This document shows positions 1,927 through 44,000 of a stretch of DNA of 64,000 nt, in pieces. Numbering within the stretch: the stretch's first letter is position 1; each line of letters begins with the position of its first letter. Source of the DNA: Paramoeba atlantica (Eukaryota; Protista; Discosea); the NCBI GenBank assembly GCA_977017575.1, contig CDRNVI010000156.1, positions 248,001-312,000 of the forward strand. Direction: 5' to 3'. The notes under the pieces were generated by a model. That model had not been told where the DNA came from and did not search any database. It saw nothing but the letters and a program-made list of their open reading frames with translations. Position numbers and translations under genes: made by a program.

Positions 1927-3744
1927 ATGGATGATGAATTGAGAGGAACAACTTTTATTCCGTATGTTCAGTCCACTTTGGAATCGTTTTCTCAAGAAAG
2001 GGCAAACTCAATGGATGCACAATCTGCTGTGGGTCTCTTCTTCTTCTTTCCTTTTCTGTTGAGCTAATTCTTTCTCTGATGTCTCTTCTTTTTCTTTTCC
2101 CCCTCCCCTGTCTCTCTTTTATCTCTTTTCTCTTTTATTTTAGTCAAACTTTCTGACCTAGAAGACCTCCGAACCAAAACCCAAATCTTGATAGAAAGAT
2201 CTCTTGAGAGAGGAGAAGATGGGAGAGTTGGGGTCCTTTTGACAATCCACGATCGACTCTCTCAAGTAATTGATTCTTATCAACTTCAAGTTTCTCAATT
2301 GGGGGAGGATCCTGGAATTCAAATTGGCGATTCCTCTCCCCAACTTCAGAAAGAAGAAGGAAGAGATGATGGAGAAAAAGATATCAAAGAAAATCCAAAA
2401 GAAGAAGAAGAAGATGGCGATGAAGATTTTGAGTGTCCAATATGTTATTGTGATTATAAAAAGAGAGAGACAACCACCCTTCAGTGTGGGCATCAGTATT
2501 GTGACACATGTATTCGTCAATATCTCAGTGGTCTTATTGCTGAAGCAGAAGTCGAAAATCTTCTTTGCCCTGATCTCGAGTAAGAGTTTTTCTCTTCTCT
2601 TCTCTTTTCAACTCTTATTGCCGCCTCTTCTCAATCTTATTACCACTCTCTATCAATCTCTCTCTCTTCTTTCACCTCTGAAAATTTTTCTTCTTATTAG
2701 TTGTGGACAAACAATCCACTACGGAGACTTAAAAAGAATTGTGGACCAAGACACTCTTCAAAAGTATGATCGCTTTGCTCTCTTAGCTTGTCTAAAAAAC
2801 GATCCAACAACTCGTTGGTGTCCAAACCCAGAATGTGAGATGGCTTATACAGGTCTTGAGAGCTCTTCTTATTTTTAATCTTTATTTTTTTTATTCTTCG
2901 ACCTGAGATTCATTGCCGTGTTAGAAGAGAAAGGGAATGATTTTGCTTTTGCATCAATTTTTTGATTTGTTTCTTGCTTTTAGGTGAATTAGCAGATCCA
3001 GAAAATCCCCGGATTGTTTGTGGTGAATGTGGTCAAGCCTATTGTTACAATTGTAAAGATCCTTGGCATGAAGGAAAGAGTTGTGCAGATTTTCAAGTTC
3101 ATTTTTCTTTTGTTTGACCATTTTTTTTTTTGTCATCTCAACTTGAAGTGATTTAGGGGAGTTTGAAGCCTGTTGATAAGAAAACCCAGAGATGGATGAA
3201 ACGGTTCATCTTTTTTTCCAATTTATTTTCTCTTTCATTATTTATTGATAAAATTGTTTTGTAGACAAGGGGTTCAAAATTGCCCTCATTGTGGGTTACC
3301 AACCATCAGAACGACTGGGTGTCGTGATATGAGATGTACGAATTGTAAAAAGGATTGGGAATGGAAAGGAGAAGCAGATGAAACAACACTTGAAAAGGTT
3401 CCCTCTCACTTTTTTTCTTTCTCTCAACCTCGCTCATTCTTTTTCAAAAGATCGCCTATTTTTACCCAAGAACTGTCAAATATGTTGCTACAAGTCGAGA
3501 AGCACATGAAGATGACGAAGGCACGCTCGATGAAATCAAAACAAATGTGGTTGCAGGAACATTTGCAGCAGTGATTCTCTCTCCTGCTCTTCTTGTTACA
3601 GTTCCCACTCTCCTTCCTGCTCTGGTAGTTACTGCTGGGAGAAAAGCAAAACATGGAATCCAGGATTTCAGGGAGTGGATGAACGAGAGCGATGATGAGG
3701 AACCAAAAGAAAAAAAAGAGGAAAATAAAGAAGAAGAGACATGA
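1927..3744 (+). CDS. RBR (RING1-IBR-RING2) E3 ubiquitin ligase with an N-terminal GAT-like helix bundle and a C-terminal hydrophobic segment; multi-exon
   Basis: RING1 CPICYCD...CGHQYCDTC...CPDLE/C; IBR WCPNPEC...CGECGQAYCYNCKDPWHEGKSC; RING2-like CPHCGLPTIRTTGCRDMRCTNC; C-terminal VVAGTFAAVILSPALLVTVPTLLPALVV. Confidence 0.85.
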
Positions 3745-3829
3745 GGGAAAAATAAATTAAGAAAAAAATAGGAAATGATCAAATGTTTTGGTTCCTTTAT
3801 TCTCTTCCATTATTTGGAATATGGAATAT

Positions 3830-6800
3830 TTATTGGCAACCTATCATGCAACCCCTAGCATCTGATTGAAAGGAGAAAATCATGGTGTGGTCTTTCAGAT
3901 CCTCACAAGTTCTTGCTGGGAGACACATTCGTTCTTGTGTTTCGGTTTGAACATACACACAACAGAGTAATACAAAAGGGGTTGGGGTTGGAATTGGGGG
4001 TGTTGGGGTTGGAGTTGGAGTTGGTGTTGGAGTTGGGGTTGGAGTTGGGGTTGGTGATGGAATAGGAGTTGGAGTAGGAGTTGGTGTTGGAGCTGGTGCT
4101 GGGGTTGGGGTTGGTGTTGGAGTTGGGGTTGGGGTTGGTGATGGTGATGGTGATGGGGTTGGAGTTGGGGTTGGAGTTGGGGTTGGAGTTGGAGATGGGG
4201 TTGGCGTTGGAGATGGGGATGGGGGAGTACAAAAAGAATAACACATTGGTTCATTGACCCAGGAAGAAGATACGAAATCCCAACCTTCTCCTTCACGATG
4301 GATGTCACAAGAAGAACGATCTGTGGGCACACAATCTAAAATTGAAGGTCGAGAGATCCATGAATAAAGACAACAATTTCGAATTGGGAATGGGGTTGGT
4401 GTTGGGGGTGGAGTGGGGATTGGAGTTGGAGTTGGGGTTGGAGTTGGAGTTGGAAATGGAGTTGGTGTAGGTGTAGGAGTTGGTGTTGGTATCGGAATTG
4501 GGTTTGGTGTTGGAGTTGGGGTTGGTGTGGGAGAGGGTGAAGGGGGATAACAAAATCTGCAGTCACTATTGTGTCGCACATAATCGACTTCCCAATTAAT
4601 TAAACTGATACATTCTGTATGGAGCTCCAAACATTGTTGACGAGAGGGGTCTTTGAACGAGTGATATACACAACAATTTGTTGGAGCAGGAGAAGGGGTT
4701 GGAGTTGGAGTTGGAGTTGGAACTGATGTTGGAACTGGCGCTGGTACTGGAGTGGGGGGAGCACAAAATAAATAGCATTCATCCTCATAATGGTTCATTA
4801 ATTCATCGATGAGCTCCCACTTTGGTAGATCTGGGCACTTGTTTCCCAGAGTCAAACATTGTTTCACAGAGTGCTCACTTTTATAAGAATAAACACAGCA
4901 ATTTGATCTGCTTCGCTCCGGCGCGGGAGCGGGGATTGGGGCTGGATGAGGTGTTGGTGTAGGTACCGAAGAAGGAGTTGGTATGGGAGATGAAGGAGTA
5001 ACCAATGAATAGGTATTGAGAGTCAATTCAGATGAACGAAGCGTGCCATAATCACCAGCAGTTAAGTCACTGATTTCGATGGTCCATGTTCCTATTTCAA
5101 TTTATGAACATCACTCAATATTACAAGTTGAACAACAAAGAAAAAGAGGAGAGGAGATTGACCTGAGACAGGTTCTCGCCAATGTTTTGTTGAGGAGAAT
5201 TTCCAATTCTCAAATGATAGAGGCATTTTTTCGATTTTTTGACTCGGTTCGACACTCATCGTGTGTCCTCTTGCGGTCCATAAAAGTAACCGAAAGTCAC
5301 TTGGAGTGACAGAATAAGCGGGGATTCCTCTCAGATGTGGTTCATAGATTTCATGCTCCTCTAAAATTGAGAGTGGTTATTGAACTGCAAAGTCAGATTG
5401 AAAAGAGAACTTCCGAACCAACAACAATTGCGTCAGGACCGAGATGGTGGCCCTTTGGGTCGAGTATTTCAACAATCTCTTCGTGTTGAGTGCACATTTG
5501 ATGTTTCTCAAGCAACAATAACGCAGTCACTCCAGGAGTTTTTCTAATTTTGGAAAAAGATTAATTCAACGAATGTGTTTTGGAACAAGCGAAAGAAAAA
5601 ACCGTGGGAGAGTAAATGAGCAGGAACTTCTCTTGCAACAATTTCCCGACTTCGTTGTTGAATACAAAACCACTTCACCTCCTTCCCATGTATCTCCAGC
5701 TGGCCAAGATTTAGAGATCAAAATTTTGAATTAATTTGAATCCATCAGCTTAAAATTGAACCTTGAGTTAGAGACACAACTGGAATCGGAGTTTTTGCGC
5801 GATTTGGCAAATGGAACACCAGAGAAAACTTTTGAATATCAATTAAAATCATTTTCCAAACAGATATGAAAGAAAAGTGAAGAAAAACCTCTTCAGATTT
5901 TTGGCTTCTAGGAGAAACCAACTCACTCCGTGTACCAGAAGGTGAAATCAGCGAAATCCCCAAATCACTCGGTTGTTCATGAAGAATATTGACTTGCAAT
6001 GTGACCTATCAAATTAAAAATCATTTCAAAATGAAATCATGAGAACTGAAATATCATATCTCTTTTCAAACCCAATCAACAAAGCGATTTGTTGTTCTCT
6101 TGACAACCAGAGGAATACTAATCGTGCCAGGATCAGGAATAGATTTCGTCACTGAGGTGTTCACAACAATATCCTAAGAATAATGTGTCAAAAAAAAGAG
6201 AACATCAATTTTTTGTGGAGAGAAAAAAAGAACGAACATCTTCTGGGGTGAAAGTATAAGGGAGGCTATCCTCTGCTGCCATTCTGACAGCTTTTGTGGC
6301 ATCGATTGGACCAAATCCAAGCTGAGAAAAAAAAGAGTGAATAAGGAAGGAACACAAATATTGTCCACCTAATTATGATCTTCTTCTTCAAAGAAATAAG
6401 TATTTACTTGACTTTCAAAATAAAGACCAGCTCCATTTTTCTGAAGATTGGGATAATCTTCTGGAAAAGAAGAAGTTGCAACAAGAATATGAGCAATTTC
6501 TCGAGGAGTCAATGGCTTTGAACTCGCTTGTATCATCAATGAGACCACTCCAGCTACAAATCAAAAGATATCTTTAATTTTTGATGAAAAGAGGAGAGGA
6601 AGTGTTAAAGAGAAGCAAACCAACAATTGCAGCAGAATATTGACCACCTATTCGTTCAGAACACGATTTTCCATCACCATAAGGAGTTGGTATCCCTTGG
6701 AGTGAAGATCCTCCAGGAGCAGAGACCAACTAAAAACAAGAATTACAAAAAATAACATGGTTAAAAAAGTGATTTGAAAAGATCTTAAAAAAAACCGCAT

Positions 6801-7890
6801 TTGCACAAGGTTCTCCAAAATCACTTGGATGACCACCTAACATATGAGGTCCCACAGAGATTGAAAATGGGTGATTGGAGTACATATCATAATTACAATT
6901 ATCTCGCCTTCCTCCATTCCCTAAAAAAAAGTAAAATTGAATCATTTTTCTCTTTTGATTTGGTCATTTCTCTGTAAGAAACGTCATCTTGAGGAACCTG
7001 TAAAAGAAATGACAACGACCCCACGAGCGACAGCATTTCGCACAGATTCCCAACAAGCGTCGCAAGGAACATTACCATAACCCCCATCAGTGGCAGTGAA
7101 AGTTTGAAGAAAGATGTCAGGAGAATCCAAATTCAAAAATTTCAAATCAAGAGCATTCGCAGATCCAAGACCAACAATAGAATAAGATGCTCCATGAGCC
7201 ACTCCTCTTGTACAAGCACCGTTAAAGGCGGTTCCAACAGTAGTCCCAATGACAGATGTTGCTACTTGGGAAGGATTCTTGACAGAAACCTGGGAAAGAT
7301 ATTTTGGTTTTTCTTCCTCCATTGGAAAGAAGGAAAAGAAGAGATATCAAAACTGACCTCTGGGTTCATGTGACCAATAAGATCTCTGTGATTTGGGTTT
7401 GGGCCAACGAAACTGATTGCGATTCGAGTTCCTATGAATATGTTTGTGAATCTTTTTGCAAAAATTTTGAGATTCAGAGTGTTTCCTGAGGACAAAACTA
7501 AGATTTGAAAAGGGAAACCTTCTCCAGTAAATCCCATCTCCCAGACCCGTTCCACATTGATATGTCCTTGTTTCCGAATGATCAGAAAGAAACGAAAAAA
7601 TCAAGAAAAAGGGAATCAAGAAACAAGAAAAAGAAAAACTGACCATCAAGTTTGGCATATGGGTCAGTCGACTCCTCATAAGCAATGGTATGGAGATGCC
7701 AAGAAGAAGGAAAGAGGGGATCAAGATCATCAAACTTTGGGTGCTCCTCTTCCCATTCGGGTTCATCTCCCCACGAAATCCCTCGAGTAGGATGAACAGG
7801 AGAGTCTTGCCAAGAAAACTCAACAAAACTTGCTGAAGGGATAAGGAGGGTAACCACCAAAGAAACCCAAAGAGAGAATGAGAGTTTCAT
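3830..7890 (-). CDS. Secreted kexin/furin-like pseudoprotease 1 (S8B + P-domain with insertion + PT stalks + 4 six-Cys modules); multi-exon
   Basis: Signal peptide [19 protein letters not shown]; [11 protein letters not shown]; [17 protein letters not shown]; [16 protein letters not shown]; [25 protein letters not shown]; P-domain [21 protein letters not shown]...[14 protein letters not shown]; tail ORF 3830-5026. Confidence 0.85.
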
Positions 7891-33903: not shown

Positions 33904-34216
33904 TGAAAAGAGTCAAGAGTTGAGAGGATTCTCCTCAAAAGAAACTTTTTCCTCGTCTTTCTTCTTCCTCTCTCTCTTGTGCTCTCGCCTTTGTCTCGCT
34001 CTGTTTGTTGCTTTTTTTCCAAAAAAGGTTTTTGGGTCTTTTTTGCTGACTTAAAAAATATCTAAAAAAGGGAAAAAATTCTCTGGTATCATTTTTTCGT
34101 TGAAAGAAAGTTTTGTTTCGTTGAAATTGTCTCAGAAAAGACGCCTTTTGTTTTTTCACTTTACTTTTTCTTTTTCTTTTTTGCACTTCAAAAACAAAAG
34201 CGTGTACGTGGAAAAA

Positions 34217-35542
34217 ATGGCTGCTGAAGGCGCTCAATTGGTAACTGTGGAAGGTCATGTCGGTCCTTCCGCAGTCCTGAAAGGAATTAAAAATCAAGTT
34301 CATGTCTATTTCGAAACGGTAACAGGTGAATCTGCGGAAGAAGGCCGCCCTCCAGTCGATTTATGTCTTGTCCTGGATCGTTCTGGATCCATGAGATCGA
34401 AAAATAAGATGTCAACCGCTAAAGCTGCCATCAAAGGCCTTGTTGAAAAGTTGTCAGAAGGGGATCGATTGGCTTTGGTTGTTTATGATACAAAGGTTTC
34501 TGTTGTGATGGGTTTTGATGACTATTCTGTGACTGATATTTCTGGTATCTTTGGTTGTATTGATCGTGTTGATTGCCAAGGAACCACAAATCTTCACGGG
34601 GGATTGAAAGAAGGATTTAATTTATTCAAGAAAATTGAAGAAACTGGTGGGACAACAGGACGAAACAAGAAAATCTTCCTCTTTAGTGACGGTTTGGTGA
34701 ATGCCGGAGAGACAGATCCCACAAAAATTTGTAATTTTGTTTCAACAATCGCTGATTCTGGAATTACAGTTGATTCTTTTGGAATTGGGGATGATTTCAA
34801 TGAAGACTTAATGCAAAATATTGGAGAGTTTGGTTGTGGTCGATTTCTGTTTATCGAGTCCTCGGAGGCAATGGATCAGTTTGTTTCTTTCGCTTTGAAA
34901 GGTGTGCTCCGTTTAGTCGCTCGTCAAGCAACATTGAAAGTTCGAGGAGCAGGCCCATCAATTGCTGAGAGAGTATATGATGGAGACCTGGTGAGTGGAT
35001 TTGCCCTCAATGACCTGACAGCAAAGAATACTCGTGGTGTGTTGGTGGAAGTGTCTTGTTCTCCAAGTGCCGAAGAATCTCGAGATCGAGTGGAGTTATT
35101 GAAATGGGAGCTTGATTTCATCAATACAAATGGAGACCCTGTTTCTTTGAAAGGGACAGTGGATGTCATGGTAACTGATGATGATTCTAAACTCCCCAAA
35201 TCAAAGAATCCTGCGGTTGCTGTTGCCCTCCTGGTTCGAAGATCATCCGAAATTGACGAAAAAGCCGACGCGCTTCTCGAGAGTGGAAAAAGAAAAGAAG
35301 CTACAGCATTGAAAGAAGAATTACTGGCTGAGATGACTGAACTCTCAGTTTTGGCTCCGGATAATGTCAAGTTGAAATCTCTTCTCATCGCACAAAAGAG
35401 GTCTGTTCAGGAACTGAAAGATACTCAGACAAGTGTCAAGAAGAATCAGAAGATCAGCAAGAAGAACCAGTATCGAAATCGCCGTGATTCAATGGATTAC
35501 TGCATGAATGATATGGTTTGGGAATGTCAGAATTTGGATTAA
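34217..35542 (+). CDS. von Willebrand factor type A (VWA) domain protein, intronless
   Basis: MAAEGAQ... ORF with PVDLCLVLDRSGSM (MIDAS DxSxS), GTTNL..GL, IFLFSDGLVNAG and FGIGDDFNEDLM..I..G.G motifs. Confidence 0.9.
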   Translation: MAAEGAQLVTVEGHVGPSAVLKGIKNQVHVYFETVTGESAEEGRPPVDLCLVLDRSGSMRSKNKMSTAKAAIKGLVEKLSEGDRLALVVYDTKVSVVMGFDDYSVTDISGIFGCIDRVDCQGTTNLHGGLKEGFNLFKKIEETGGTTGRNKKIFLFSDGLVNAGETDPTKICNFVSTIADSGITVDSFGIGDDFNEDLMQNIGEFGCGRFLFIESSEAMDQFVSFALKGVLRLVARQATLKVRGAGPSIAERVYDGDLVSGFALNDLTAKNTRGVLVEVSCSPSAEESRDRVELLKWELDFINTNGDPVSLKGTVDVMVTDDDSKLPKSKNPAVAVALLVRRSSEIDEKADALLESGKRKEATALKEELLAEMTELSVLAPDNVKLKSLLIAQKRSVQELKDTQTSVKKNQKISKKNQYRNRRDSMDYCMNDMVWECQNLD

Positions 35543-35640: not shown

Positions 35641-38018
35641 CTAGTCCTGTTGCCCATCAGAGGGACAATTTTTTTTGAGATGACCAGTTTGGCCACATTT
35701 CCAACATTTTCCACGATCTTTGCTTTTGCTTCGTTCTCCATTTTCACTTTTTTGTCCATTTCGAGCTCGCCCACTGCAATCAAAATGTGAAAATGAGCAA
35801 TCAGAAAGAAAAAAAAGAAAAGAGAAAATATACCGAGGTTTCCTTTCCTTTTCTTGAGAGAGGAACAGAGATGGTTGATTTTCAATCTTTCCTTTTGGAA
35901 TTGAGTTGCGTGCCAATGCTGCATAGCTTCCAGTAATGACCTTGGGTGCAGGAGACGGTGATGGGGCTGATGATGATGCTGATGAAGATGAAGGAGATGG
36001 AGAAGAGGAGGAGGGCGAGGGAGATGGGGAAGGTGAGGGAGAGGAGGAGGAGGAAGAGGAAGAAGAGGAAGAAGAGGAAGAAGAGTTTTTTGGTGGAGAT
36101 GGAGAAGACACAGATATCTTTGGATTTTTCCCTTTCTTACCTTTTTTTTTGGCGGGTTGTGACCGGGCAGGAGCTGGAGCAGGAGATGGTTGAGCAGGAG
36201 ATTCTGGCTTAGCAGGAGATTCTGGTTTAGCGGGAGATTTTGGTTTAGCGGGAGATTTTAATTTCGCAGATTCTGGCTTAGCAGAAGATTCTGGCTTAAC
36301 AAGAGATGGTTTAGCAGGAGGAACAGGAGATTCAGATGCAGGTTTAGCCGGAGATTTGTCTTCTTCTGCAGGTGTTGAGGAAGGAGATCGAGAGCGAGAA
36401 CGAGAACGAGATTTAGATCGCTTTCTGTTTCGCCCACGAGGAGACAAAGATGGCGAAGATGGAGGCTGACCAGAAGGATTGGGAGCTAAAGAAGAGGAAC
36501 TTGATTGCTTCTTCTTCTCATAAATTTTGATGATACACAAGAGCTATAAACAGGTTGTTCAGGAATTAAGCTTTTTCCTACTAAAATCATTTTTGAATTT
36601 AAAATCAAGGAACCTGCCCATGGTCACTCTTGGTCTGATCTCTTCGATCCCGGACCAAAGTTTCATCATAAACATGGTCATTGAAAACACGAAGGAGAGA
36701 GACCTCGCCAATTCGATGAGGATTGGTAATGCTGGAATTACAGATTCAACTCCTGGAATATTCACTTCGCAAGAGTTAAGAAAGAAAAAGGAAACCTAAA
36801 TTCTTGACTGACGAGAATGTGGTCGAGTGCTTCATACTCGTGATTAAAGATATGAGTATAGATTGTGTCTCTTGAATTAGCCAACTGTCCAGTTTTAAAA
36901 GTGTCACTTAACTGATAAATCCCCAATCATTGTTGTTTTCTAAAAAAATAAAGAACCCTCTTTTGAATATTTTGGGTGGACCAGAGTAATACATCCCAAA
37001 TTTTGAGCTTTTGTTCTTTGGGGAGCATCTCCCAAGGCGGCTGTCCGGAGATAATCTGCGTTGTATCACTCTTGAAACAATCGTTCATATCCCCAATCAA
37101 AACCAAAGGCTTTAAAAATGTTTTTTTCAGGAAAAATAAGCAGAACGAGTATTTACATGTCGAAAAATCAATAAACCTGAGCATTTTCTTGCATTTCGTC
37201 AACCAAAATATGACGCAGGGCAACACTCTCAGCAGCTCGGAGAATCAAGCTGCAAGACCTCTCATTTTTAGGAAAAAGATAAATGAAGTGAACTAATTGA
37301 AAGATTAATTGACCTCTTTGCTGATCCCACAGCTTGTTTTTTCTGGTCATGGCGATCTTGAGAGGACACAATAGGCCGTTTGCTCTTCAAATGAACAACC
37401 ATGAAGCATATCACAGTATCCTTGACTTGGATTCGAACTTTGAGAACTGGTCGGGAAAATTTTTTGATTGGAAGAGGCCCTAAGTCTTCAAAATCGATGA
37501 GGGATTCTTTGGGAAAGTCTTCCAAACTTTCGACTGAAAGCTGTTTCCGAAAGGAGAGAGGAGCATGAATATTCACATAATTTTCATTCAAAAAGAAATA
37601 AAATACAAACAATGGGGTATTTTGAAGCGAGAGCAACTACAGGTGAACCGCCAGACGCTCCTTCGCAAATGAGTCGATTTCCGCTCGCTTCATAAACTCC
37701 TGAAAGCTTGATGGCTTTCATCAACTCTTCTGGATGAAAAACCTAAAAATATTTCTTGATGAGAAAGAGGTTGAAGAGAAAAAGAATTTGGGAATAAAAC
37801 CTCTTGAAACCCAATCACATCAGCATCCATCTCCTTCAATTGATCTGCGATCCATTCCGCTTTCTTCCCGGCTTTCTCCTCAGATAACCCTGTTAACAAA
37901 CATCAACAGGAAATCAAGAGACTAAAAATAGGGGAGGAAACAAACCTGGGCGATTATATACAACTGAATTTGGTTTTGCAAGGTTCAACAAATTGAACGT
38001 TCCCACTTTGAACTTCAT
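35641..38018 (-). CDS. Endonuclease/exonuclease/phosphatase (EEP) family protein with a Ser/Pro/RS-rich tail and a C-terminal CCHC zinc knuckle; multi-exon
   Basis: MKFKVGTFNLLNL; DADVIGFQEV; VVHLKSKRP; LIGDMND; YEALDHILVSQE; KSDHGQV; tail with RSKSRSRSRSRSPS and CWKCGQTGHLKKNC. Confidence 0.85.
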
Positions 38019-38257
38019 CTTTTGAGCCTTTCTGTTCTTTCACCAAACCGAAAAGAGAAAAAGAAAAGCGAAAAAGACAAAAAAAAGAAAAAGAAACCCA
38101 AAAAAATAGTGCCCTATTTAAACGTATTTTATTATTGTGGCGAAATTCCGATGAATTCTCATCCAATTCTAGTCCAATTTTTTCGACCGAACTTTTTTTT
38201 TGTTTGGGCGGTTGGGGTGCTGTTTTTGTTTTTGTGATATCTTTGTTGTTCATCGTA

Positions 38258-40946
38258 ATGTTTCAGAAAAAGAAAAAGAAAACAGCAGATATCGACTTGA
38301 GTTTTCAAAAGAAAAATATTACTGATTGGACAGTTCGAGATGTTGGGATGTGGTTAAGGTATTGTAACTTGGACGAATATCAAGAGGCTTTCTTCTTCAA
38401 TGAGGTTTCTCTTTTTCTGACTTCGTTTTTCCTGGAAAAAATTGGATGACAAGACATTTGAAAAGGTTGATGGTGAGATGCTCCTCGACATTGACGACGA
38501 TGATTTAATTGCAATTCCGATTGAAAAGATTGCACATCGAAAAAAAATTCTTCGAAAGATCGGAATCTTAGTCGGGAGGCCTCCTTCCTCTTCGTCCTTT
38601 ACCAGGTCTTTGCCTCTCTTCAATTCCTTTCTCTTTCTTTTTTCAAAAAACTCAAAAAACTATAACCTTGTAGTCGATCAATGAGTTCGATGACTGGCGG
38701 TTTTGCAGCCTTTTCGGATGACGGGACGATGACAGATTGTACTTCTCTTTCTGAGGATAAAGTCCATATTAAATGTGTGTATCATTCTGACATTCGAACG
38801 TTTACTCTTCAACCCCTGGAAACATTTGAAGAATTTGCTCGCAAAATTGAGGTTTCAAAGTTCTCTAATTATCCAATATTTTCTCTTTTCCTGAATATTT
38901 TAATAAAAAGGAAGAGTTTGGGCATCACAAATCAGCAAAATATCAAGATGAAGAGGGAGACCTCTTAACAATTAGGAATACAGAAGATATTAGAGCTGTT
39001 ATTAGAGCCTCAAGGGTATGTACAAAAGAAAATAGATTCTTATTTTTTTTCTGACGTTTCTCTTAGGTTCGAAAAGTTCGATTGATCATTTTTACCCATC
39101 GCAAGAGCAAACATTCAAAAGAGAAAAAGAAGAGAAGGTTTGTTTTTTTCTCCTTTTTTCTCTTCTTCAAGATTCATTTTCAATGAATAAGAGAAACTTC
39201 AAAAAAAAAAAGAAACTCATCCCAATTACCATCCAAAAAACTCTCTCCCCTTGCAGTAGGAGCAAGAAGAAATCTTCGAATTCGTCAGTCACCGAAGAAG
39301 GAGATGTTTTGGAACATTTTGTGGATGCAGTGGCGATTTCCAATCGCAGAGGAATCATCACTTTCTTCAACGCTGCAGCTGAAACGATGTTTGGATGGCC
39401 TCGAGAAGAGGTTATTGGAAAAAATGTTTCAATTTTGATGGTTGAGGCCGTTGGATCTCGCCATAATGCTTACATGAGACGATATCGCAGGTTTTGTCTT
39501 GAACAAATTCTTTCTCTTTTGATTTTGGCTGTTCTTCTAATATTTTAGATATCAAGAGAGGGAAATTCGAAGATTATTGGACAGAATCGCCGTGTACAAG
39601 GGCTTCACCAGAATGGTGAAGTATTTGATCTTTACATCACTCTCTCGGAGTCGAGCAGGAGCTTCACTGCCACGATGAAGCTTATCCCAAAGAAGGGCGC
39701 GGAAGCACCCATTGTTGAACAATTACAGAAAAAAAAGGAGAACACGCTTGAAGGGATTGCGAGCGAATTGAACGCGCTTGAAGAATATCGAGAAAGTATC
39801 ATTGTTGTTGATTCAGAAGGCACAATTCACTATGCAAACAAAATTGCCCATGCTGAGCTAGACTATGAGCCAAAAGGACTTGTGGGTCTTTCTGTGAGCA
39901 CGATTTGTGATGCAATCCGAAGTGAAGATGAGAGCCATGACTTGCTTTTTGACTACCAGGCGAGCAAAGATGATCCAAATCGAACAAGAGAACTGTTAGA
40001 TGATAAAAATCGTCGATGTGTGATTTGTCTAAATTCAAAACGGCAATTCAGAGCTTATGAGGCCGAGTTTTCTGATCTTTCTTATCGGGACCACCAGCTC
40101 TACACGATTCATCTCCGAAAACAAGGGGTGACCTCGAAATCAGCTGTCGCAGCAAGTGCCAGTATTCTAGATATTCAAAGGGATGTGATCAGTAGTCTTG
40201 TGGTTCCTGGCATCATTCTTGACTCTGACTCAATTATTCAAGGAACCAATCTCGCTTTCTCAGAACTCTTTGGTTGGTCATTCAGTGAATTGCTTGGTCG
40301 CTCTGTGAACATGTTAATTCCCCCCGGAGATGTACGTGACAATCATCTCAAATGGATGAAGAATTATGCTCGTACTGGGAGAGGTCGCAGCTCAAATGGA
40401 ACCTCAGAAGTTGTAGGGAAAGGAAGAGAAGTTATTGCAATGAAAAAGAACGAAACTCAAATTCGTGTGCAGCTTTCTGTCTCTGTGATTCAAAATTCTG
40501 ATGAGAAAATCTTTATTGGAATTGTGCAATACCGAGGCGATGTTGAGGCTGGAGGTGCTGGGGATGTGCAAGTTAAATCTCAAATGTTGGATGTCCAAGT
40601 CCAAGTCATCTCTTCGTTAGCGATCCCAGCTTGTATCATCACTGGGGATTCGGTAATTCGAGCCTTTAATCAATCTTGTCAAGATCTCTTTGGCTACAGT
40701 TTGAAGGAAGTTGAGTTTCAAAAGGTAGAGCTTTTAATGCCACCAGGAGAAATTCAGGAGAAACACGAAACTTTTGTCCACAATTTTGTCTCTGGGAAGA
40801 AAAATCCCAGTGAGTCAATTGTAGTTGGAAAAGGAAGAAGGGTTATTGGCCGCCATAAGAATGGCCATAATATCTCAATAATGATCTCTGTGACACAGAG
40901 GCGGGATGGTGATGTCGTCATATTTACAGCAATTTTTACTCCTTAA
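38258..40946 (+). CDS. SAM + PB1 + four PAS domains (three FixL-type heme-PAS); multi-exon
   Basis: SAM: DWTVRDVGMWLRYCNLDEYQEAF...VDGEMLLDIDDDDL...HRKKILRKI. PB1: HIKCVYHSDIRTF...KYQDEEGDLLTI. PAS1: FNAAAETMFGW...SRHNAYMRRY. Further PAS domains lie in ORF 39675-40946. Confidence 0.85.
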
Positions 40947-41078: not shown

Positions 41079-44000
41079 TTAAAATTCATCACTCAAACAG
41101 CCATCATCAGAAGAATCAGAATCAGAAGAATCAGAAGAATCAGAAGAATCAGAATCGCCTTCATTTTCATAAGGATCCAATTCATACTCTCCCATTTTGA
41201 TGTCTTCATCTTCATCTTCTTCATCTTCATCTTCATCTTCATCTTCATCTTCATCTTCATCTTCATCTTCATCTCTCTCTTTCATCTCTTCATCTTGTTT
41301 GGGTTCTTCTTTAGTTTCCTCTGTTTTGAAATCTTTTTTTTCGAACTTCTCTTCCACTTTTTCTTCCGCGTTTCCTCCTTCTGTTCCGTCTTTTGGGTTT
41401 TCACTTTTTTCTTTCTCACAACCAGCTCCCTTCTCTTCTCTTCCCCCATCAGTTTTTTCTTGGTCAATACTTTCTTCCTCTTTTCCTTTTTTTTCTTCCC
41501 CCTTTTCCTCATTTTGTTCTTCAATTTGAGCTGCCTTTTCAACTCTTATGTCCTCTTTCTCTTCTTTTTTTTCTTCTGGTTTCATTTCTCCCTTCTCCTC
41601 GGATTTTTCTTCTCTCTTCTCCTCTGATTTTTCTTCTCTTTTCTCCTCTTCCCTCTCGTTCTCCCTCTCTTCTCTACTCTCACCGAGGCCAGCTGTTTTT
41701 TCAACCTGATCCACCTCAACCTCACCTTTGTCTTCTTTTTCCTTTTTGTCATCCTCTTCTTTCTCCTCTCTTTTTTCTCCCTTTCCTCCTTTCTCATCAT
41801 CATGGTATTTTTTGAGATTCTCAACAAATTTCTCTTCTTTCACAGTCCCGACTGCCGATGGAAATCGTTTCGAATTTCTTGTTTGATCGACAATTTCAAC
41901 AATATCTCCTAGCACAATCGGTTTTGTTCCTTTTTTTTCAAAAACGATCATAATTTCATCTTCGTCATCCACTGGGGCAGGAGGTGGCGTCTTTCTTTTC
42001 GTTTCTTCCGGATGAGATGTGGTATGGATGGGAGCAGCTGTTTCAGTTGACACTCCTGGGGAGATATTCTTTGAAATTGGCCTTGGAGTGGAAGTTGGGG
42101 GGGTTAAATTTGGAGAGATAGGTGTGGGCGTTGAATTTGGGATTGGGGTAAGTGTTGGTACTAGGGGGGATGGTGTGGGTGAGAGAGACGGAAGAGCAGA
42201 GGGAGCTGTTAAAGATGTTGAATGTTGTTGAGTTGCTGGAGAGAGTGATGATGATGGAGATGAAGTTGGCTGTGAGGACGATGGATGAAATTGTGGTGCC
42301 ACTAAAACCTGCGATTGCAGGGGAGACGGGAAAGGTGATGGCAATGGAGGTTGTGATGGGAATTGTGGTTTGGATGTTTGAGAGGATGTTGATGTAGCCG
42401 CAGGCGCAGTTTGCGCACCAATCGGTGCCCAAGAAGGCGGTTCAGAAGTGCCTGAAGAAACAGATGATGGGGATGGAGAAGGAGAAGGAAAAGGAGATGG
42501 GGAAGATTTTTGAAGAAGACCAACAAGTTCTGATTTTTCAATACAACCAGAAAAATCAATTTTCTTCTTTTTCAACTCATTTTTCAGCTCTGAGACTTTC
42601 ATATTTTCAATTGGAACTTCAGCAGAAGAAACAGACGGAGAAGAAGAGTTTTTAGGAAGAGCAGGAACAGAAGGGGAAAAGGAGGGAGACGGGGAGGGGG
42701 AAGGTGAGGGGAGAGAAGAAGGAACAGAGGTCATGACAACAGAAGGGGAAAGATTAGACGCCTGGGAGGAGTGGTGAGCAGGAGGATAAGAAGAGCTTCG
42801 AGAAGAAGAAGAGGAAGATGGTGATGGTGAGGGAGAGAGAGAAGCAACTCTTTTCTCTTCCTTGGCTTTGACGGAGATTGAAGATTGATTGGATAAATTC
42901 ATTTTTTGGTGTTCCATCTTGAGATCCTATTTTAAATGAATAAAAAATTAAGGGATAAAAAGAATCTTAAAAATAAACCTCTTTTGAGTGTGGAGATTCC
43001 TCAGGGCGATCATCATACATAGTCGCATCAAGAGGACAATTCTCCAAGCTTTCGAGGGACTTTTTCATTATTGAATTGGAAGAAGTTTCTTTGACCTGCT
43101 TTATATGGTCATCAACGATCGGAGCAAGCTTTTTGAGAGATTCCTGTGGGGAAAAGAGATCAAAAAGTTGGACTGACAAATTACAAATTACCAAAAAGAA
43201 AATTAAAATTATCTAAACAAACTATCAAAAATAATGAAAATAAATAAATTAATTGTAAAATAGAAGAGAACAATCGAAGTTTGGAGTTTAGAGCTACAAA
43301 GAGGCTCTACCAAGGACACCAAGAAGGAAATACAATGTTGATTTAATGGTTTAACCATGGTGTGGATTGAGGTTTCCAATGATTTTAAATCCTGTAAAAT
43401 AAAAAAGAATAAATTTTTCACCATATTTTTGTGCCCAACTTGTCGAGAATGATATTGAGATGAGAAACCTTAATCAAAATATTGACTGCTTGATCAAACA
43501 TGACAAGCCTCTCTTTCTCTGTGTGCGCATGAATATGTCCTTTGATTCTTGCATAACACCCCGGTCCAGACTCTTCTTTGGCACGAAGAAAACCTGGGAG
43601 CATTTTCTCTTGAATATGAGGCGCAACTACCCGACTGACATCTTTTTGTTGATCTTTTACCGAACTTAAAATAGATTCAAAGAGGTGGCTGAGACGATGA
43701 TTGACATAATCGAGTAGCACAGGCTTCAGTCTCTTTACACGATCTGATTCAACTCCCAATAAGATTACTTCGTTGGCCAAAACTTCAAATGTTCGAAGTA
43801 TATCAGCTTTAAAATGTGCATTGAGATCTTTGAGGATACGAGGGAGATCACTGGAAAAGATACGGTCCCAGAAAACAGAGAAGATGCGATAAACAGGCTC
43901 CGCAAATTCTTCAGGTATGTTGATGACACCCCATGTTGGACTTGAGGAGAGAACACATTAAAAATTAAAATTTGATAAAAAACTGGATTTCTCTTCCACT

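What the first reader, a model, noticed from the sequence alone, without database searches (positions are those of the whole stretch)
38258..40946. SAM-PB1-(PAS)x4: a multi-heme-PAS gas-sensor candidate with scaffold domains but no catalytic output
Seen: PAS1 reads SRHNAYMRRYRREGNSKIIGQNR, with His and Arg exactly 20 residues apart. PAS3 (NHLKWMKNY...VVGKGR) and PAS4 (KHETFVHNF...VVGKGR) keep both residues; PAS2 lacks the His. The ORF ends right after PAS4. Established: B. japonicum FixL (SRHDSYISRY...IIGIGR) uses H200 as proximal heme ligand and R220 to stabilise O2. SAM and PB1 are hetero-oligomerisation modules typical of MAPKKK/scaffold signalling (Ste11/Ste50, MEKK2/3). Inference: a eukaryotic O2/CO/NO sensor adaptor that signals by SAM/PB1 docking. 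I know of no described protein with this architecture.
Basis: partly seen in the sequence, partly recalled or inferred. Interest (0 to 1): 0.7.

Follow-up and report, generated by a model that had tools for sequence, protein, structure and literature searches.

The report
Amoeba haem-sensor-like scaffold protein
This amoeba gene encodes two protein-docking domains followed by four sensor domains, three of which closely resemble the haem pocket of the bacterial oxygen sensor FixL; it has no enzyme part, and it belongs to a widespread family of amoebae for which I found no functional study.

Summary
A seven-exon gene on the + strand (38258-40946, 754 codons) encodes SAM, PB1 and four PAS domains. 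Spliced contigs of run X1 show all six introns. A transcript-derived protein of the same species (P0032) matches every exon and ends at the same residue.

PAS1, PAS3 and PAS4 have only haem-PAS structures (FixL, DosP) as significant PDB matches. PAS1 aligns without gaps to B. japonicum FixL at about 40% identity (E 1.6e-18). The proximal His and the O2-contacting Arg are invariant in 13 family members. PAS2 is a confident PAS fold that lacks the His. No kinase, cyclase or other output domain exists: the stop codon is followed by a convergent gene, and transcript-derived and intronless orthologues end at the same place.

The uniqueness claim does not hold. The same architecture occurs in Paramoeba atlantica and P. 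aestuarina. A three-PAS version occurs in Acanthamoeba castellanii, Mayorella and Pharyngomonas, and Balamuthia has a PB1 plus three-PAS protein. Relatives carry PP2C, kinase or cyclase outputs. This scan had already noted two paralogues on other DNA of this genome (s1-381707, s1-381681).

I found no functional study of the family. Haem binding, the ligand and SAM/PB1 signalling remain inferences. Verdict: a new variant of a known kind.

The parts
38258..38404 (+). Exon 1 (aa 1-49): start ATG, basic N-terminus, first half of SAM
   Evidence: SAM_2/SAM_1, weak on this half. It is 100% identical to P0032 residues 17-65. The GT..AG joint to 38466 is seen in run X1.
38466..38605 (+). Exon 2 (aa 50-95 plus 2 bases of codon 96): second half of SAM
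   Evidence: Pfam SAM_2 E 8.7e-9 on an earlier, 12-base-longer version of this exon (38454-38603). It is 46/46 identical to P0032 residues 66-111. Joints on both sides are seen in X1.
38674..38851 (+). Exon 3 (aa 96-155): Ser-rich linker and PB1 strands beta1-beta2, with the basic Lys129 (38771-73)
   Evidence: It is 56/58 identical to P0032 residues 113-170. Lys129 and Cys130 are invariant in 13 family members. Joints are seen.
38911..39015 (+). Exon 4 (aa 156-190): PB1 core with the acidic OPCA-type motif KYQDEEGDLLTIR (38938-38976)
   Evidence: Pfam PB1 E 3.8e-5, 24.0 bits against a cut-off of 23.6. D168, G171, D172, I176 and R177 are invariant. Joints are seen.
39067..39137 (+). Exon 5 (aa 191-213 plus 2 bases): last PB1 strand and the start of a Lys/Arg-rich linker
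   Evidence: It is 100% identical to P0032. In the AF2 model the strand is 195-200 and residues 203-235 are disordered. Joints are seen.
39257..39490 (+). Exon 6 (aa 214-291 plus 2 bases): basic linker and the N-terminal half of PAS1, including proximal His283 (39462-64)
   Evidence: Pfam PAS E 1.3e-12. BjFixL 1dp6 matches at E 1.7e-12. Joints are seen.
39557..40946 (+). Exon 7 (aa 292-754 plus stop): rest of PAS1 (Arg303 at 39588-90), then PAS2, PAS3, PAS4, and TAA at 40944-46
   Evidence: It is 97% identical to P0032 and ends at the same residue.
38297..38579 (+). SAM domain (aa about 14-87, spans intron 1)
   Evidence: Pfam. The AF2 model shows a helical bundle with pLDDT 82-89.
38756..39102 (+). 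PB1 domain (aa about 124-202, spans introns 3 and 4); it has both the basic Lys and the acidic OPCA motif (type AB by sequence)
39297..39689 (+). PAS1 (aa about 228-336, spans intron 6): the most FixL-like domain, with His283, Arg289 (FixL R206 position) and Arg303
   Evidence: E 1.6e-18, ungapped over 94 aa. His lies in an alpha helix and Arg in a beta strand of the AF2 model, the elements that correspond to FixL's F-alpha and G-beta.
39741..40121 (+). PAS2 (aa about 354-480): PAS fold without the haem His; it has its own invariant set (Y369, G380, N386, D420, L421, D424, N443, R445, C449, F463)
   Evidence: The AF2 domain model has pLDDT 91. The best Foldseek matches are the FG214 haem PAS, RmFixL and DosP.
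40158..40547 (+). PAS3 (aa about 493-622): His555, Arg582, and a 7-residue insertion in the FG loop relative to FixL
   Evidence: BjFixL E 3.1e-9.
40572..40943 (+). PAS4 (aa about 631-754): His695, Arg719, and a 4-residue FG-loop insertion; it is the C-terminus of the protein
   Evidence: FixL E about 1e-8.

Best explanation
The gene encodes a cytosolic sensor protein with no enzymatic domain. It is built from a SAM domain, a PB1 domain that carries both the basic Lys and the acidic OPCA motif, a disordered Lys/Arg-rich linker, and four PAS domains.

PAS1, PAS3 and PAS4 are descendants of the FixL/DosP haem-PAS lineage. They most likely each bind one haem b through the conserved His on the F-alpha helix. 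The conserved G-beta Arg and the hydrophobic distal residues would then form a FixL-like, probably five-coordinate, gas pocket for O2, with CO or NO as alternatives. PAS2 is a degenerate copy that has lost the His and probably serves as a structural or dimerisation module.

Ligand binding is inferred to shift the F-helix and FG loop, as it does in FixL. Because there is no enzyme, this shift would be read out as a change in self-association or in partner recruitment through the SAM and PB1 modules.

Shown here: the gene model, transcription and splicing, the domain architecture, conservation of pocket residues, the absence of an output domain, and membership of a wide protist family.

Inferred: haem binding, which gas or redox signal is sensed, and the SAM/PB1 read-out.
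For: Gene model and expression:
- Six GT..AG joints are present in contigs of run X1.
- The transcript-derived protein P0032 matches all exons in order.

Domains: Pfam finds SAM, PB1 and PAS. The AF2 model shows six folded domains joined by disordered linkers.

Haem-PAS identity:
- All significant PDB sequence matches of PAS1, PAS3 and PAS4 are FixL or DosP haem domains, apart from one weak non-haem hit for PAS1.
- His and Arg are invariant in 13 family members that share 41-60% identity.
- In relatives, 92 of 98 PAS domains keep both residues, including all three domains of the Acanthamoeba and Balamuthia proteins.
- Positions equivalent to FixL I215, I216, L236 and I238 stay hydrophobic (alignments).
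- In the AF2 model His lies in a helix and Arg in a strand, at the positions that correspond to FixL's F-alpha and G-beta.
- Xing et al. 2023 (PMC10468136) report that this His is the primary determinant of haem binding in the FixL/DosP PAS cluster.
- The nearest bacterial relatives are proteins named FixL sensor kinases.

No output domain: the stop codon is followed 132 bases later by a convergent gene. P0002, P0009 and P0032 come from transcripts, and the intronless genes in L001 and L002 end right after PAS4.

PB1 type: Lys129 and the OPCA residues are invariant.
Against: - No biochemical datum exists for any member. Haem binding cannot be read from sequence with certainty.
- Only PAS1 keeps the FixL R206 position. 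FixL H214, a haem-propionate ligand, is Lys in PAS1, Glu in PAS3 and Ile in PAS4.
- PAS3 and PAS4 have longer FG loops than FixL.
- In this particular paralogue the otherwise near-invariant Lys-Gly before the PAS1 Arg reads Gln-Asn.
- The AF2 model gives no defined arrangement between domains (pTM 0.27), so any allosteric path to SAM/PB1 is conjecture.
- No partner protein is identified.
Confidence: 0.6

Rival explanations
1. The haem is bound, but the physiological signal is not O2. The protein would sense NO, CO or the cellular redox state (ferric/ferrous haem), or it would report the availability of labile haem itself.
For: FixL-type domains bind O2, CO and NO; PDB titles list all three complexes among the matches. 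The related FG214 haem PAS acts as a redox-controlled monomer-dimer switch (bioRxiv 10.64898/2026.03.15.711900). Three pockets that differ in their FG loops could have different ligand preferences.
Against: The Arg equivalent to FixL R220, which in FixL stabilises bound O2 (established knowledge), is invariant in all three domains. There is no Met at the position of the DosP distal ligand, where these domains have Gln or Lys. Both points argue for a FixL-like, O2-capable pocket.
Confidence: 0.2
2. The PAS domains bind no haem. They would act as protein-protein interaction or small-ligand modules, and the conserved His and Arg would be inherited or used for another ligand.
For: Human PASK PAS-A descends from the same cluster but binds other compounds (PMC10468136). 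Forty percent of that cluster lacks the His. Only PAS1 keeps the R206 position, and H214 is changed in all three domains (Lys in PAS1). PAS2 shows that loss of the haem site is tolerated.
Against: Here the His is strictly kept in three domains across 13 proteins, and in 92 of 98 domains of distant relatives, together with the Arg and the H-D-x-Y-x-x-x-Y context typical of FixL. That is hard to explain without the cofactor.
Confidence: 0.12
3. The gene model is incomplete or the locus is a decaying copy, and the true functional protein carries an output domain encoded elsewhere or produced by alternative splicing.
For: Relatives with PP2C, protein kinase or cyclase domains exist. The X1 contigs listed stop at 40883, about 60 bases before the stop codon.
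Against: P0032 (same species, from a 2358-base contig that lacks the introns) ends at the same residue. Thirteen homologues from transcripts and from intronless genomic ORFs end at the same place. A convergent gene starts 132 bases downstream. The reading frame is intact and all six introns are spliced.
Confidence: 0.03

Closest known systems
Bradyrhizobium japonicum / Sinorhizobium meliloti FixL (haem-PAS oxygen-sensing histidine kinase; PDB 1dp6, 1drm, 1d06, 8js5)
   Same: PAS1 aligns without gaps over 94 residues at about 40% identity. The proximal His (H200), R206, Y203/Y207, I215/I216, R220 and the L236/I238 positions are all kept. PAS3 and PAS4 keep His, Arg and the hydrophobic distal residues. 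The nearest bacterial hits to the wider family are proteins named FixL kinases.
   Different: There is no HisKA/HATPase transmitter and no FixJ-type partner. There are three putative haem domains per chain instead of one. SAM and PB1 domains of eukaryotic type sit at the N-terminus. PAS3 and PAS4 have longer FG loops.
Escherichia coli DosP / EcDOS (haem-PAS c-di-GMP phosphodiesterase; PDB 1v9y, 1s66, 9cdr)
   Same: It is the second-best group of solved relatives. The His-to-Arg spacing is the same (spacing from established knowledge).
   Different: There are no GGDEF/EAL domains. The position of the distal Met ligand of DosP is Gln or Lys here, so a six-coordinate DosP-type haem is not expected (inference).
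SAM-PB1-(FixL-like PAS)x3 proteins of other amoeboid protists, for example Acanthamoeba castellanii Neff 'PAS domain S-box domain containing protein' (P0185), Mayorella sp. (P0088) and Pharyngomonas kirbyi (P0122, P0130)
   Same: They are colinear with this protein: SAM, PB1, then FixL-like PAS domains that keep His and Arg, and most end right after the last PAS.
   Different: They have three PAS domains, usually all with His. The Paramoeba-type subfamily that includes this gene has four. By position its PAS2 is the degenerate second domain. PAS3 and PAS4 are sister duplicates of the third domain (SH-aLRT 93; quick tree). None has a published function that I could find.
Mastigamoeba balamuthi FixL-like histidine kinases acquired by lateral transfer (PMC8136499)
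   Same: They are FixL-derived sensors in an amoebozoan, proposed to sense O2 through haem.
   Different: They keep the bacterial PAS-HK-receiver architecture. The protein here has swapped the kinase for SAM and PB1. I did not compare the sequences.
Chlamydomonas reinhardtii FXL proteins (from my memory of Murthy et al. 2012, FEBS Lett; not retrievable here)
   Same: They are eukaryotic FixL-homologous PAS domains reported to bind haem and O2, with loss of haem on mutation of the His.
   Different: I do not recall a SAM or PB1 domain in them.
PAS kinase (PASK) and the PH-PAS-protein kinases of protists (P0011; L004:813-2729)
   Same: Their PAS domains come from the same FixL/DosP cluster (PMC10468136). 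P0011 keeps His and Arg in both of its PAS domains.
   Different: They carry a Ser/Thr kinase output, and human PASK has lost the His. The protein here has no kinase.

Membership tests
FixL/DosP-type haem-binding PAS domain (Pfam PAS PF00989; cluster 3 of Xing et al. 2023) | PAS fold | tested here: met
   Pfam PAS/PAS_9 hits on exons 6 and 7. The AF2 models show PAS topology for all four domains.
FixL/DosP-type haem-binding PAS domain (Pfam PAS PF00989; cluster 3 of Xing et al. 2023) | Closest sequence relatives are proven haem-PAS domains | tested here: met
   PAS1: FixL at E 1.6e-18 and DosP at about 1e-10. PAS3: FixL at 3e-9. PAS4: FixL at 1e-8. Apart from one weak non-haem PAS hit for PAS1, no other family scores significantly. 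PAS2 has no significant sequence match.
FixL/DosP-type haem-binding PAS domain (Pfam PAS PF00989; cluster 3 of Xing et al. 2023) | Proximal His on helix F-alpha (BjFixL H200) | tested here: met
   His283, His555 and His695 are invariant in 13 members and lie in helices 277-293, 550-565 and 690-703 of the model, which correspond to FixL's F-alpha. The feature is not met in PAS2.
FixL/DosP-type haem-binding PAS domain (Pfam PAS PF00989; cluster 3 of Xing et al. 2023) | Arg on strand G-beta that contacts bound O2 (BjFixL R220) and hydrophobic distal residues | tested here: met
   Arg303, Arg582 and Arg719 are invariant. The I215/I216/L236/I238 positions are Ile/Ile/Ile/Leu in PAS1 and Val/Val/Leu/Val in PAS3 and PAS4.
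FixL/DosP-type haem-binding PAS domain (Pfam PAS PF00989; cluster 3 of Xing et al. 2023) | Binds haem b and a diatomic gas | not testable with these tools
   This needs spectroscopy of the purified domains.
FixL protein (two-component sensor kinase) | HisKA and HATPase_c transmitter downstream of the haem PAS | tested here: not met
   No such Pfam hit on any exon. The ORF ends after PAS4. It is therefore not a FixL orthologue; only the sensor domain is FixL-type.
SAM domain (PF00536/PF07647) | Profile match and helical-bundle fold | tested here: met
   Exon 2 (earlier version 38454-38603) scores SAM_2 E 8.7e-9 and exon 1 scores E 0.014. Full domains in homologues score 1e-14 to 1e-19. The AF2 model shows helices at 15-85 with pLDDT above 80.
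PB1 domain (PF00564), type AB | Profile match, plus the basic Lys on beta1 and the acidic OPCA motif | tested here: met
   Exon 4 scores PB1 at 24.0 bits against a cut-off of 23.6. Homologues score 1e-8 to 1e-14. Lys129 and Y-x-D-E-E/D-G-D-x-x-x-I are invariant or nearly so. Actual homo- or hetero-oligomerisation was not tested.
Protist SAM-PB1-(haem-type PAS)n family, unnamed | Colinear SAM, PB1 and two to four FixL-like PAS domains with no further domain | tested here: met
   Profile and word searches with domain mapping.
PAS kinase (PASK) | C-terminal Ser/Thr protein kinase domain | tested here: not met
   No Pkinase hit.

The most novel reading that the evidence does not exclude
The protein is a direct oxygen receptor of amoebae. 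It would carry three haem sites on one chain and two head-to-tail polymerising modules (SAM and an AB-type PB1). Ligand-dependent changes in the PAS array would then assemble or dissolve a signalling polymer or condensate that recruits the PP2C, kinase and RasGAP relatives. This would give amoeboid cells a non-enzymatic, cooperative O2 switch, for example for aerotaxis or hypoxia responses.
Probability: 0.15. Interest if true: 0.8.

Novelty: new variant of a known kind. Interest (0 to 1): 0.55.

Why it matters
Direct haem-based O2 sensors of the FixL type are textbook bacterial devices. In the library I could search, I found no paper describing a eukaryotic FixL-type sensor that lacks an enzymatic output.

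This gene is one member of a conserved family found in Amoebozoa (Paramoeba, Mayorella, Acanthamoeba, Balamuthia) and in a heterolobosean (Pharyngomonas). In this family, two to four FixL-like domains are grafted onto eukaryotic docking modules.

If the domains bind haem, the family offers a concrete candidate for how free-living and pathogenic amoebae perceive oxygen or NO. It can be tested directly in Acanthamoeba castellanii, which is culturable. It would also be a natural example of a bacterial sensor domain rewired from enzymatic to scaffold-type signalling.

Tried and rejected
- My first exon model placed the intron-1 acceptor at 38453. The spliced contigs of X1 and the homologues showed 38465, so I corrected it.
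Each exon was searched by reference. For full-length work I used the natural transcript-derived protein P0032 and its homologues.
- The first word-based protein search suggested a family of only about 16 clusters restricted to Paramoeba. The exhaustive profile search overturned that picture.
- The ESM Atlas feature search returned only generic single-PAS clusters and was uninformative.
- Literature searches for the Chlamydomonas FXL paper failed, as did a search for any paper combining PB1, SAM and PAS domains. Searches for haem-PAS in Acanthamoeba, Naegleria or Paramoeba found no functional study.
- The domain tree does not resolve whether the eukaryotic domains arose from one or several bacterial transfers. 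I make no claim about a donor.
- I considered a DosP-like six-coordinate haem and rejected it as less likely, because the Met position is Gln or Lys.
- The species of the window was not determined. Its closest named relative for this protein is Paramoeba atlantica, at about 60% identity.
Full report
**Observation**

The window is eukaryotic DNA with about 38% G+C and short introns.

I built an exon model from the sequence and tested it with public reads. Contigs of run X1 lack six GT..AG segments of 61, 68, 59, 51, 119 and 66 bases. This gives these exons:
- 38258-38404
- 38466-38605
- 38674-38851
- 38911-39015
- 39067-39137
- 39257-39490
- 39557-40946

The total is 754 codons. Only the first acceptor differed from my first guess.

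P0032 is a 770-residue protein in the same 90% cluster as the window's long ORF. It comes from a 2358-base contig that lacks the introns, so I take it as transcript-derived. Its residues 17-770 match the exons one after another at 97-100% identity, and it ends at the same residue, FTAIFTP. The gene is therefore transcribed, spliced as modelled, and complete.

Exons were searched one by one by reference. For whole-protein analyses I used P0032 and other natural homologues.

**Domains**

Pfam finds SAM on exons 1-2, PB1 on exon 4, and PAS domains on exons 6 and 7. An AlphaFold model of P0032:17-770, made with a 13-sequence alignment, shows six folded domains:
- SAM, residues 14-87
- PB1, residues 124-202
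- PAS1, residues 236-336
- PAS2, residues 354-480
- PAS3, residues 493-622
- PAS4, residues 631-754

The domains are joined by disordered linkers. One linker, between PB1 and PAS1, is rich in Lys and Arg. The model defines no arrangement between domains (pTM 0.27).

**Haem-PAS character**

Against all PDB sequences, the significant matches of PAS1, PAS3 and PAS4 are FixL and DosP haem domains, apart from one weak non-haem PAS hit for PAS1. PAS1 aligns without a gap to B. japonicum FixL over 94 residues. It has 38 identities by my count of the printed match line (E 1.6e-18).

PAS1 keeps these FixL positions:
- H200, Y203, R206 and Y207
- I215 and I216
- R220
- L236 and I238, which remain hydrophobic

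H214 is replaced by Lys.

PAS3 and PAS4 keep the His, the Arg and the hydrophobic distal positions. They have Asn at the R206 position, and their FG loops are 7 and 4 residues longer.

In the model, each His lies in a helix and each Arg in a strand, the elements that correspond to FixL's F-alpha and G-beta. His283/Arg303, His555/Arg582 and His695/Arg719 are invariant in 13 family members that share only 41-60% identity.

According to Xing et al. 2023, this His is the primary determinant of haem binding in the FixL/DosP cluster (PMC10468136).

PAS2 has no significant sequence match. It nevertheless folds with high confidence as a PAS domain (pLDDT 91). Its nearest structures are haem PAS domains: FG214, RmFixL (TM 0.71) and DosP. 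It lacks the His and has its own invariant residues.

**No output domain**

- No exon gives a kinase, cyclase, phosphatase or other catalytic hit.
- The stop codon is followed 132 bases later by the end of a convergent gene (41079-42917, minus strand).
- Transcript-derived orthologues from Paramoeba atlantica (P0002) and P. aestuarina (P0009, P0024) end right after PAS4. So do the intronless genomic ORFs on a 211-kb contig (L001) and a TARA metagenome scaffold (L002).

Word-based searches found about 16 clusters with the identical architecture. The named ones are all Paramoeba.

An exhaustive profile search of 1.84 billion representatives added about 35 further representatives with SAM and/or PB1 followed by two or three FixL-like PAS domains. 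Most of them end right after the last PAS. Among their 98 PAS domains, 92 keep both His and Arg.

Named members are:
- Mayorella sp., Amoebozoa
- Pharyngomonas kirbyi, Heterolobosea
- Acanthamoeba castellanii Neff, annotated only as 'PAS domain S-box domain containing protein' (P0185)
- Balamuthia mandrillaris (P0201), which has PB1 and three PAS domains but no SAM hit on record, and is labelled a histidine kinase although no kinase domain is on record for it

Relatives with catalytic outputs also exist:
- SAM-PASx3-PP2C (P0150, P0151)
- a RasGAP fragment followed by SAM-PB1-PASx2 (P0162)
- PH-PAS-protein kinase (P0011)
- PASx3-cyclase (P0207)

These were found. One 8.4-kb contig carries a kinase form, a PP2C form and a PAS-only form side by side.

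After the eukaryotic proteins, the next-best hits are bacterial proteins named FixL kinases. They have two tandem PAS domains that keep His and Arg.

A quick domain tree places PAS3 and PAS4 as sisters (SH-aLRT 93). They sit inside the clade of the third domain of the three-PAS proteins (SH-aLRT 83). PAS1 groups with the first domains. PAS2 is a long unresolved branch at the position of the second domain. The tree does not resolve the bacterial origin.

This scan had already noted two SAM-PB1-4xPAS paralogues on other pieces of this genome (s1-381707 and s1-381681).

**Mechanism**

The best-supported reading is a haem-based gas or redox sensor without enzymatic output. Three FixL-type pockets would bind the ligand.

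The conserved Arg, together with the absence of a DosP-type distal Met, favours an O2-capable, five-coordinate haem. This is an inference from established FixL and DosP biochemistry.

The read-out would be a change in self-association or partner recruitment through SAM and PB1. The PB1 domain has both the basic Lys129 and the acidic motif, so by sequence it is of the type that can chain head to tail (type definition from established knowledge).

The existence of paralogous architectures with PP2C, kinase and RasGAP parts suggests which enzymes such a scaffold might engage. No partner is shown.

Haem binding, ligand identity and the read-out are all untested.

**Literature**

I found no paper that describes this architecture or any member of the family.

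The closest published eukaryotic cases I could read are two:
- FixL-like histidine kinases of Mastigamoeba balamuthi, acquired by lateral transfer (PMC8136499)
- the statement that PASK PAS domains of Acanthamoeba, Thecamonas and Capsaspora fall in the haem-PAS cluster (PMC10468136)

From memory, Chlamydomonas FXL proteins were shown to bind haem and O2 (Murthy et al. 2012). I could not retrieve that paper, so it is a lead only.

**Verdict**

This is a new variant of a known kind: FixL-type haem-PAS sensor domains on a eukaryotic SAM-PB1 scaffold. It belongs to an uncharacterised but widespread protist family, and it was seen before by this scan in paralogues.

Noticed in passing
L004:813-7073 (Logan DRR438522 contig): Three genes with FixL-like PAS domains lie side by side in an unidentified organism: PH-PAS-protein kinase (813-2729, minus), SAM-PASx3-PP2C (3001-5535, plus, P0151) and a PASx3-only protein (5562-7073, minus). 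All are called as uninterrupted ORFs.
   Followed up: partly
P0033-P0070; L003:504-7841: These are giant proteins of 1.6 to 5.5 thousand residues made of 13 or more FixL-like PAS domains and nothing else that Pfam recognises. P0033 lies on NCBI assembly GCA_963693005.1 next to an acetyl-CoA carboxylase carboxyltransferase-like gene, with overlapping gene ends, so it is probably bacterial.
   Followed up: partly
window 39256: Run X3 (same organism code, another sample) has G>A at the G of the intron-5 acceptor AG. The next AG lies 3 bases downstream (39258-59), so an in-frame shift of one codon is expected in that strain. This was not checked with RNA of that strain.
   Followed up: no
L001:3001-5196 and L002:3001-5274: Orthologues with the same six-domain architecture are intronless in two other organisms (a 211-kb ENA contig and a TARA Oceans scaffold). 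The window's gene has six short introns, three of which split domains (SAM once, PB1 once more inside the domain, PAS1 once).
   Followed up: partly
P0201 (Balamuthia mandrillaris, NCBI): It is named 'PAS domain-containing sensor histidine kinase', but the Pfam hits on record are only PB1 and PAS. All three PAS domains keep His and Arg. This is probably an annotation carried over from bacterial FixL.
   Followed up: partly
window 39741-40121 (PAS2): The His-less PAS2 has its own invariant residues (Y369, G380, N386, D420, L421, D424, N443, R445, C449, F463), including a D-L-x-x-D-Y/F motif where the haem His would be. This suggests a retained but different function. In Pharyngomonas and in P0096 the second PAS has also lost the His or the Arg.
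   Followed up: partly
window 41079-42917 (-): The convergent downstream ORF of 612 aa is extremely Ser/Pro-rich in its N-terminal half and Glu/Lys/Asp-rich in its C-terminal half. It has a weak ARMET_C (SAP-like) match at residues 102-140 (E 4e-4, below the cut-off).
   Followed up: partly
window 34100-35542 (+) and 35641-36540 (-): Upstream neighbours are an ORF with a von Willebrand factor A domain (E 1e-16) and a Ser/Pro/Lys-rich ORF that ends in a CCHC zinc knuckle.
   Followed up: partly
window 38050-38290: In the DNA-like runs X2, X3 and X5, many contigs break or join at an A/G-rich low-complexity stretch in the 5' region of the gene. This gives spurious joints and very high summed depth, so it looks like a dispersed simple repeat.
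   Followed up: no
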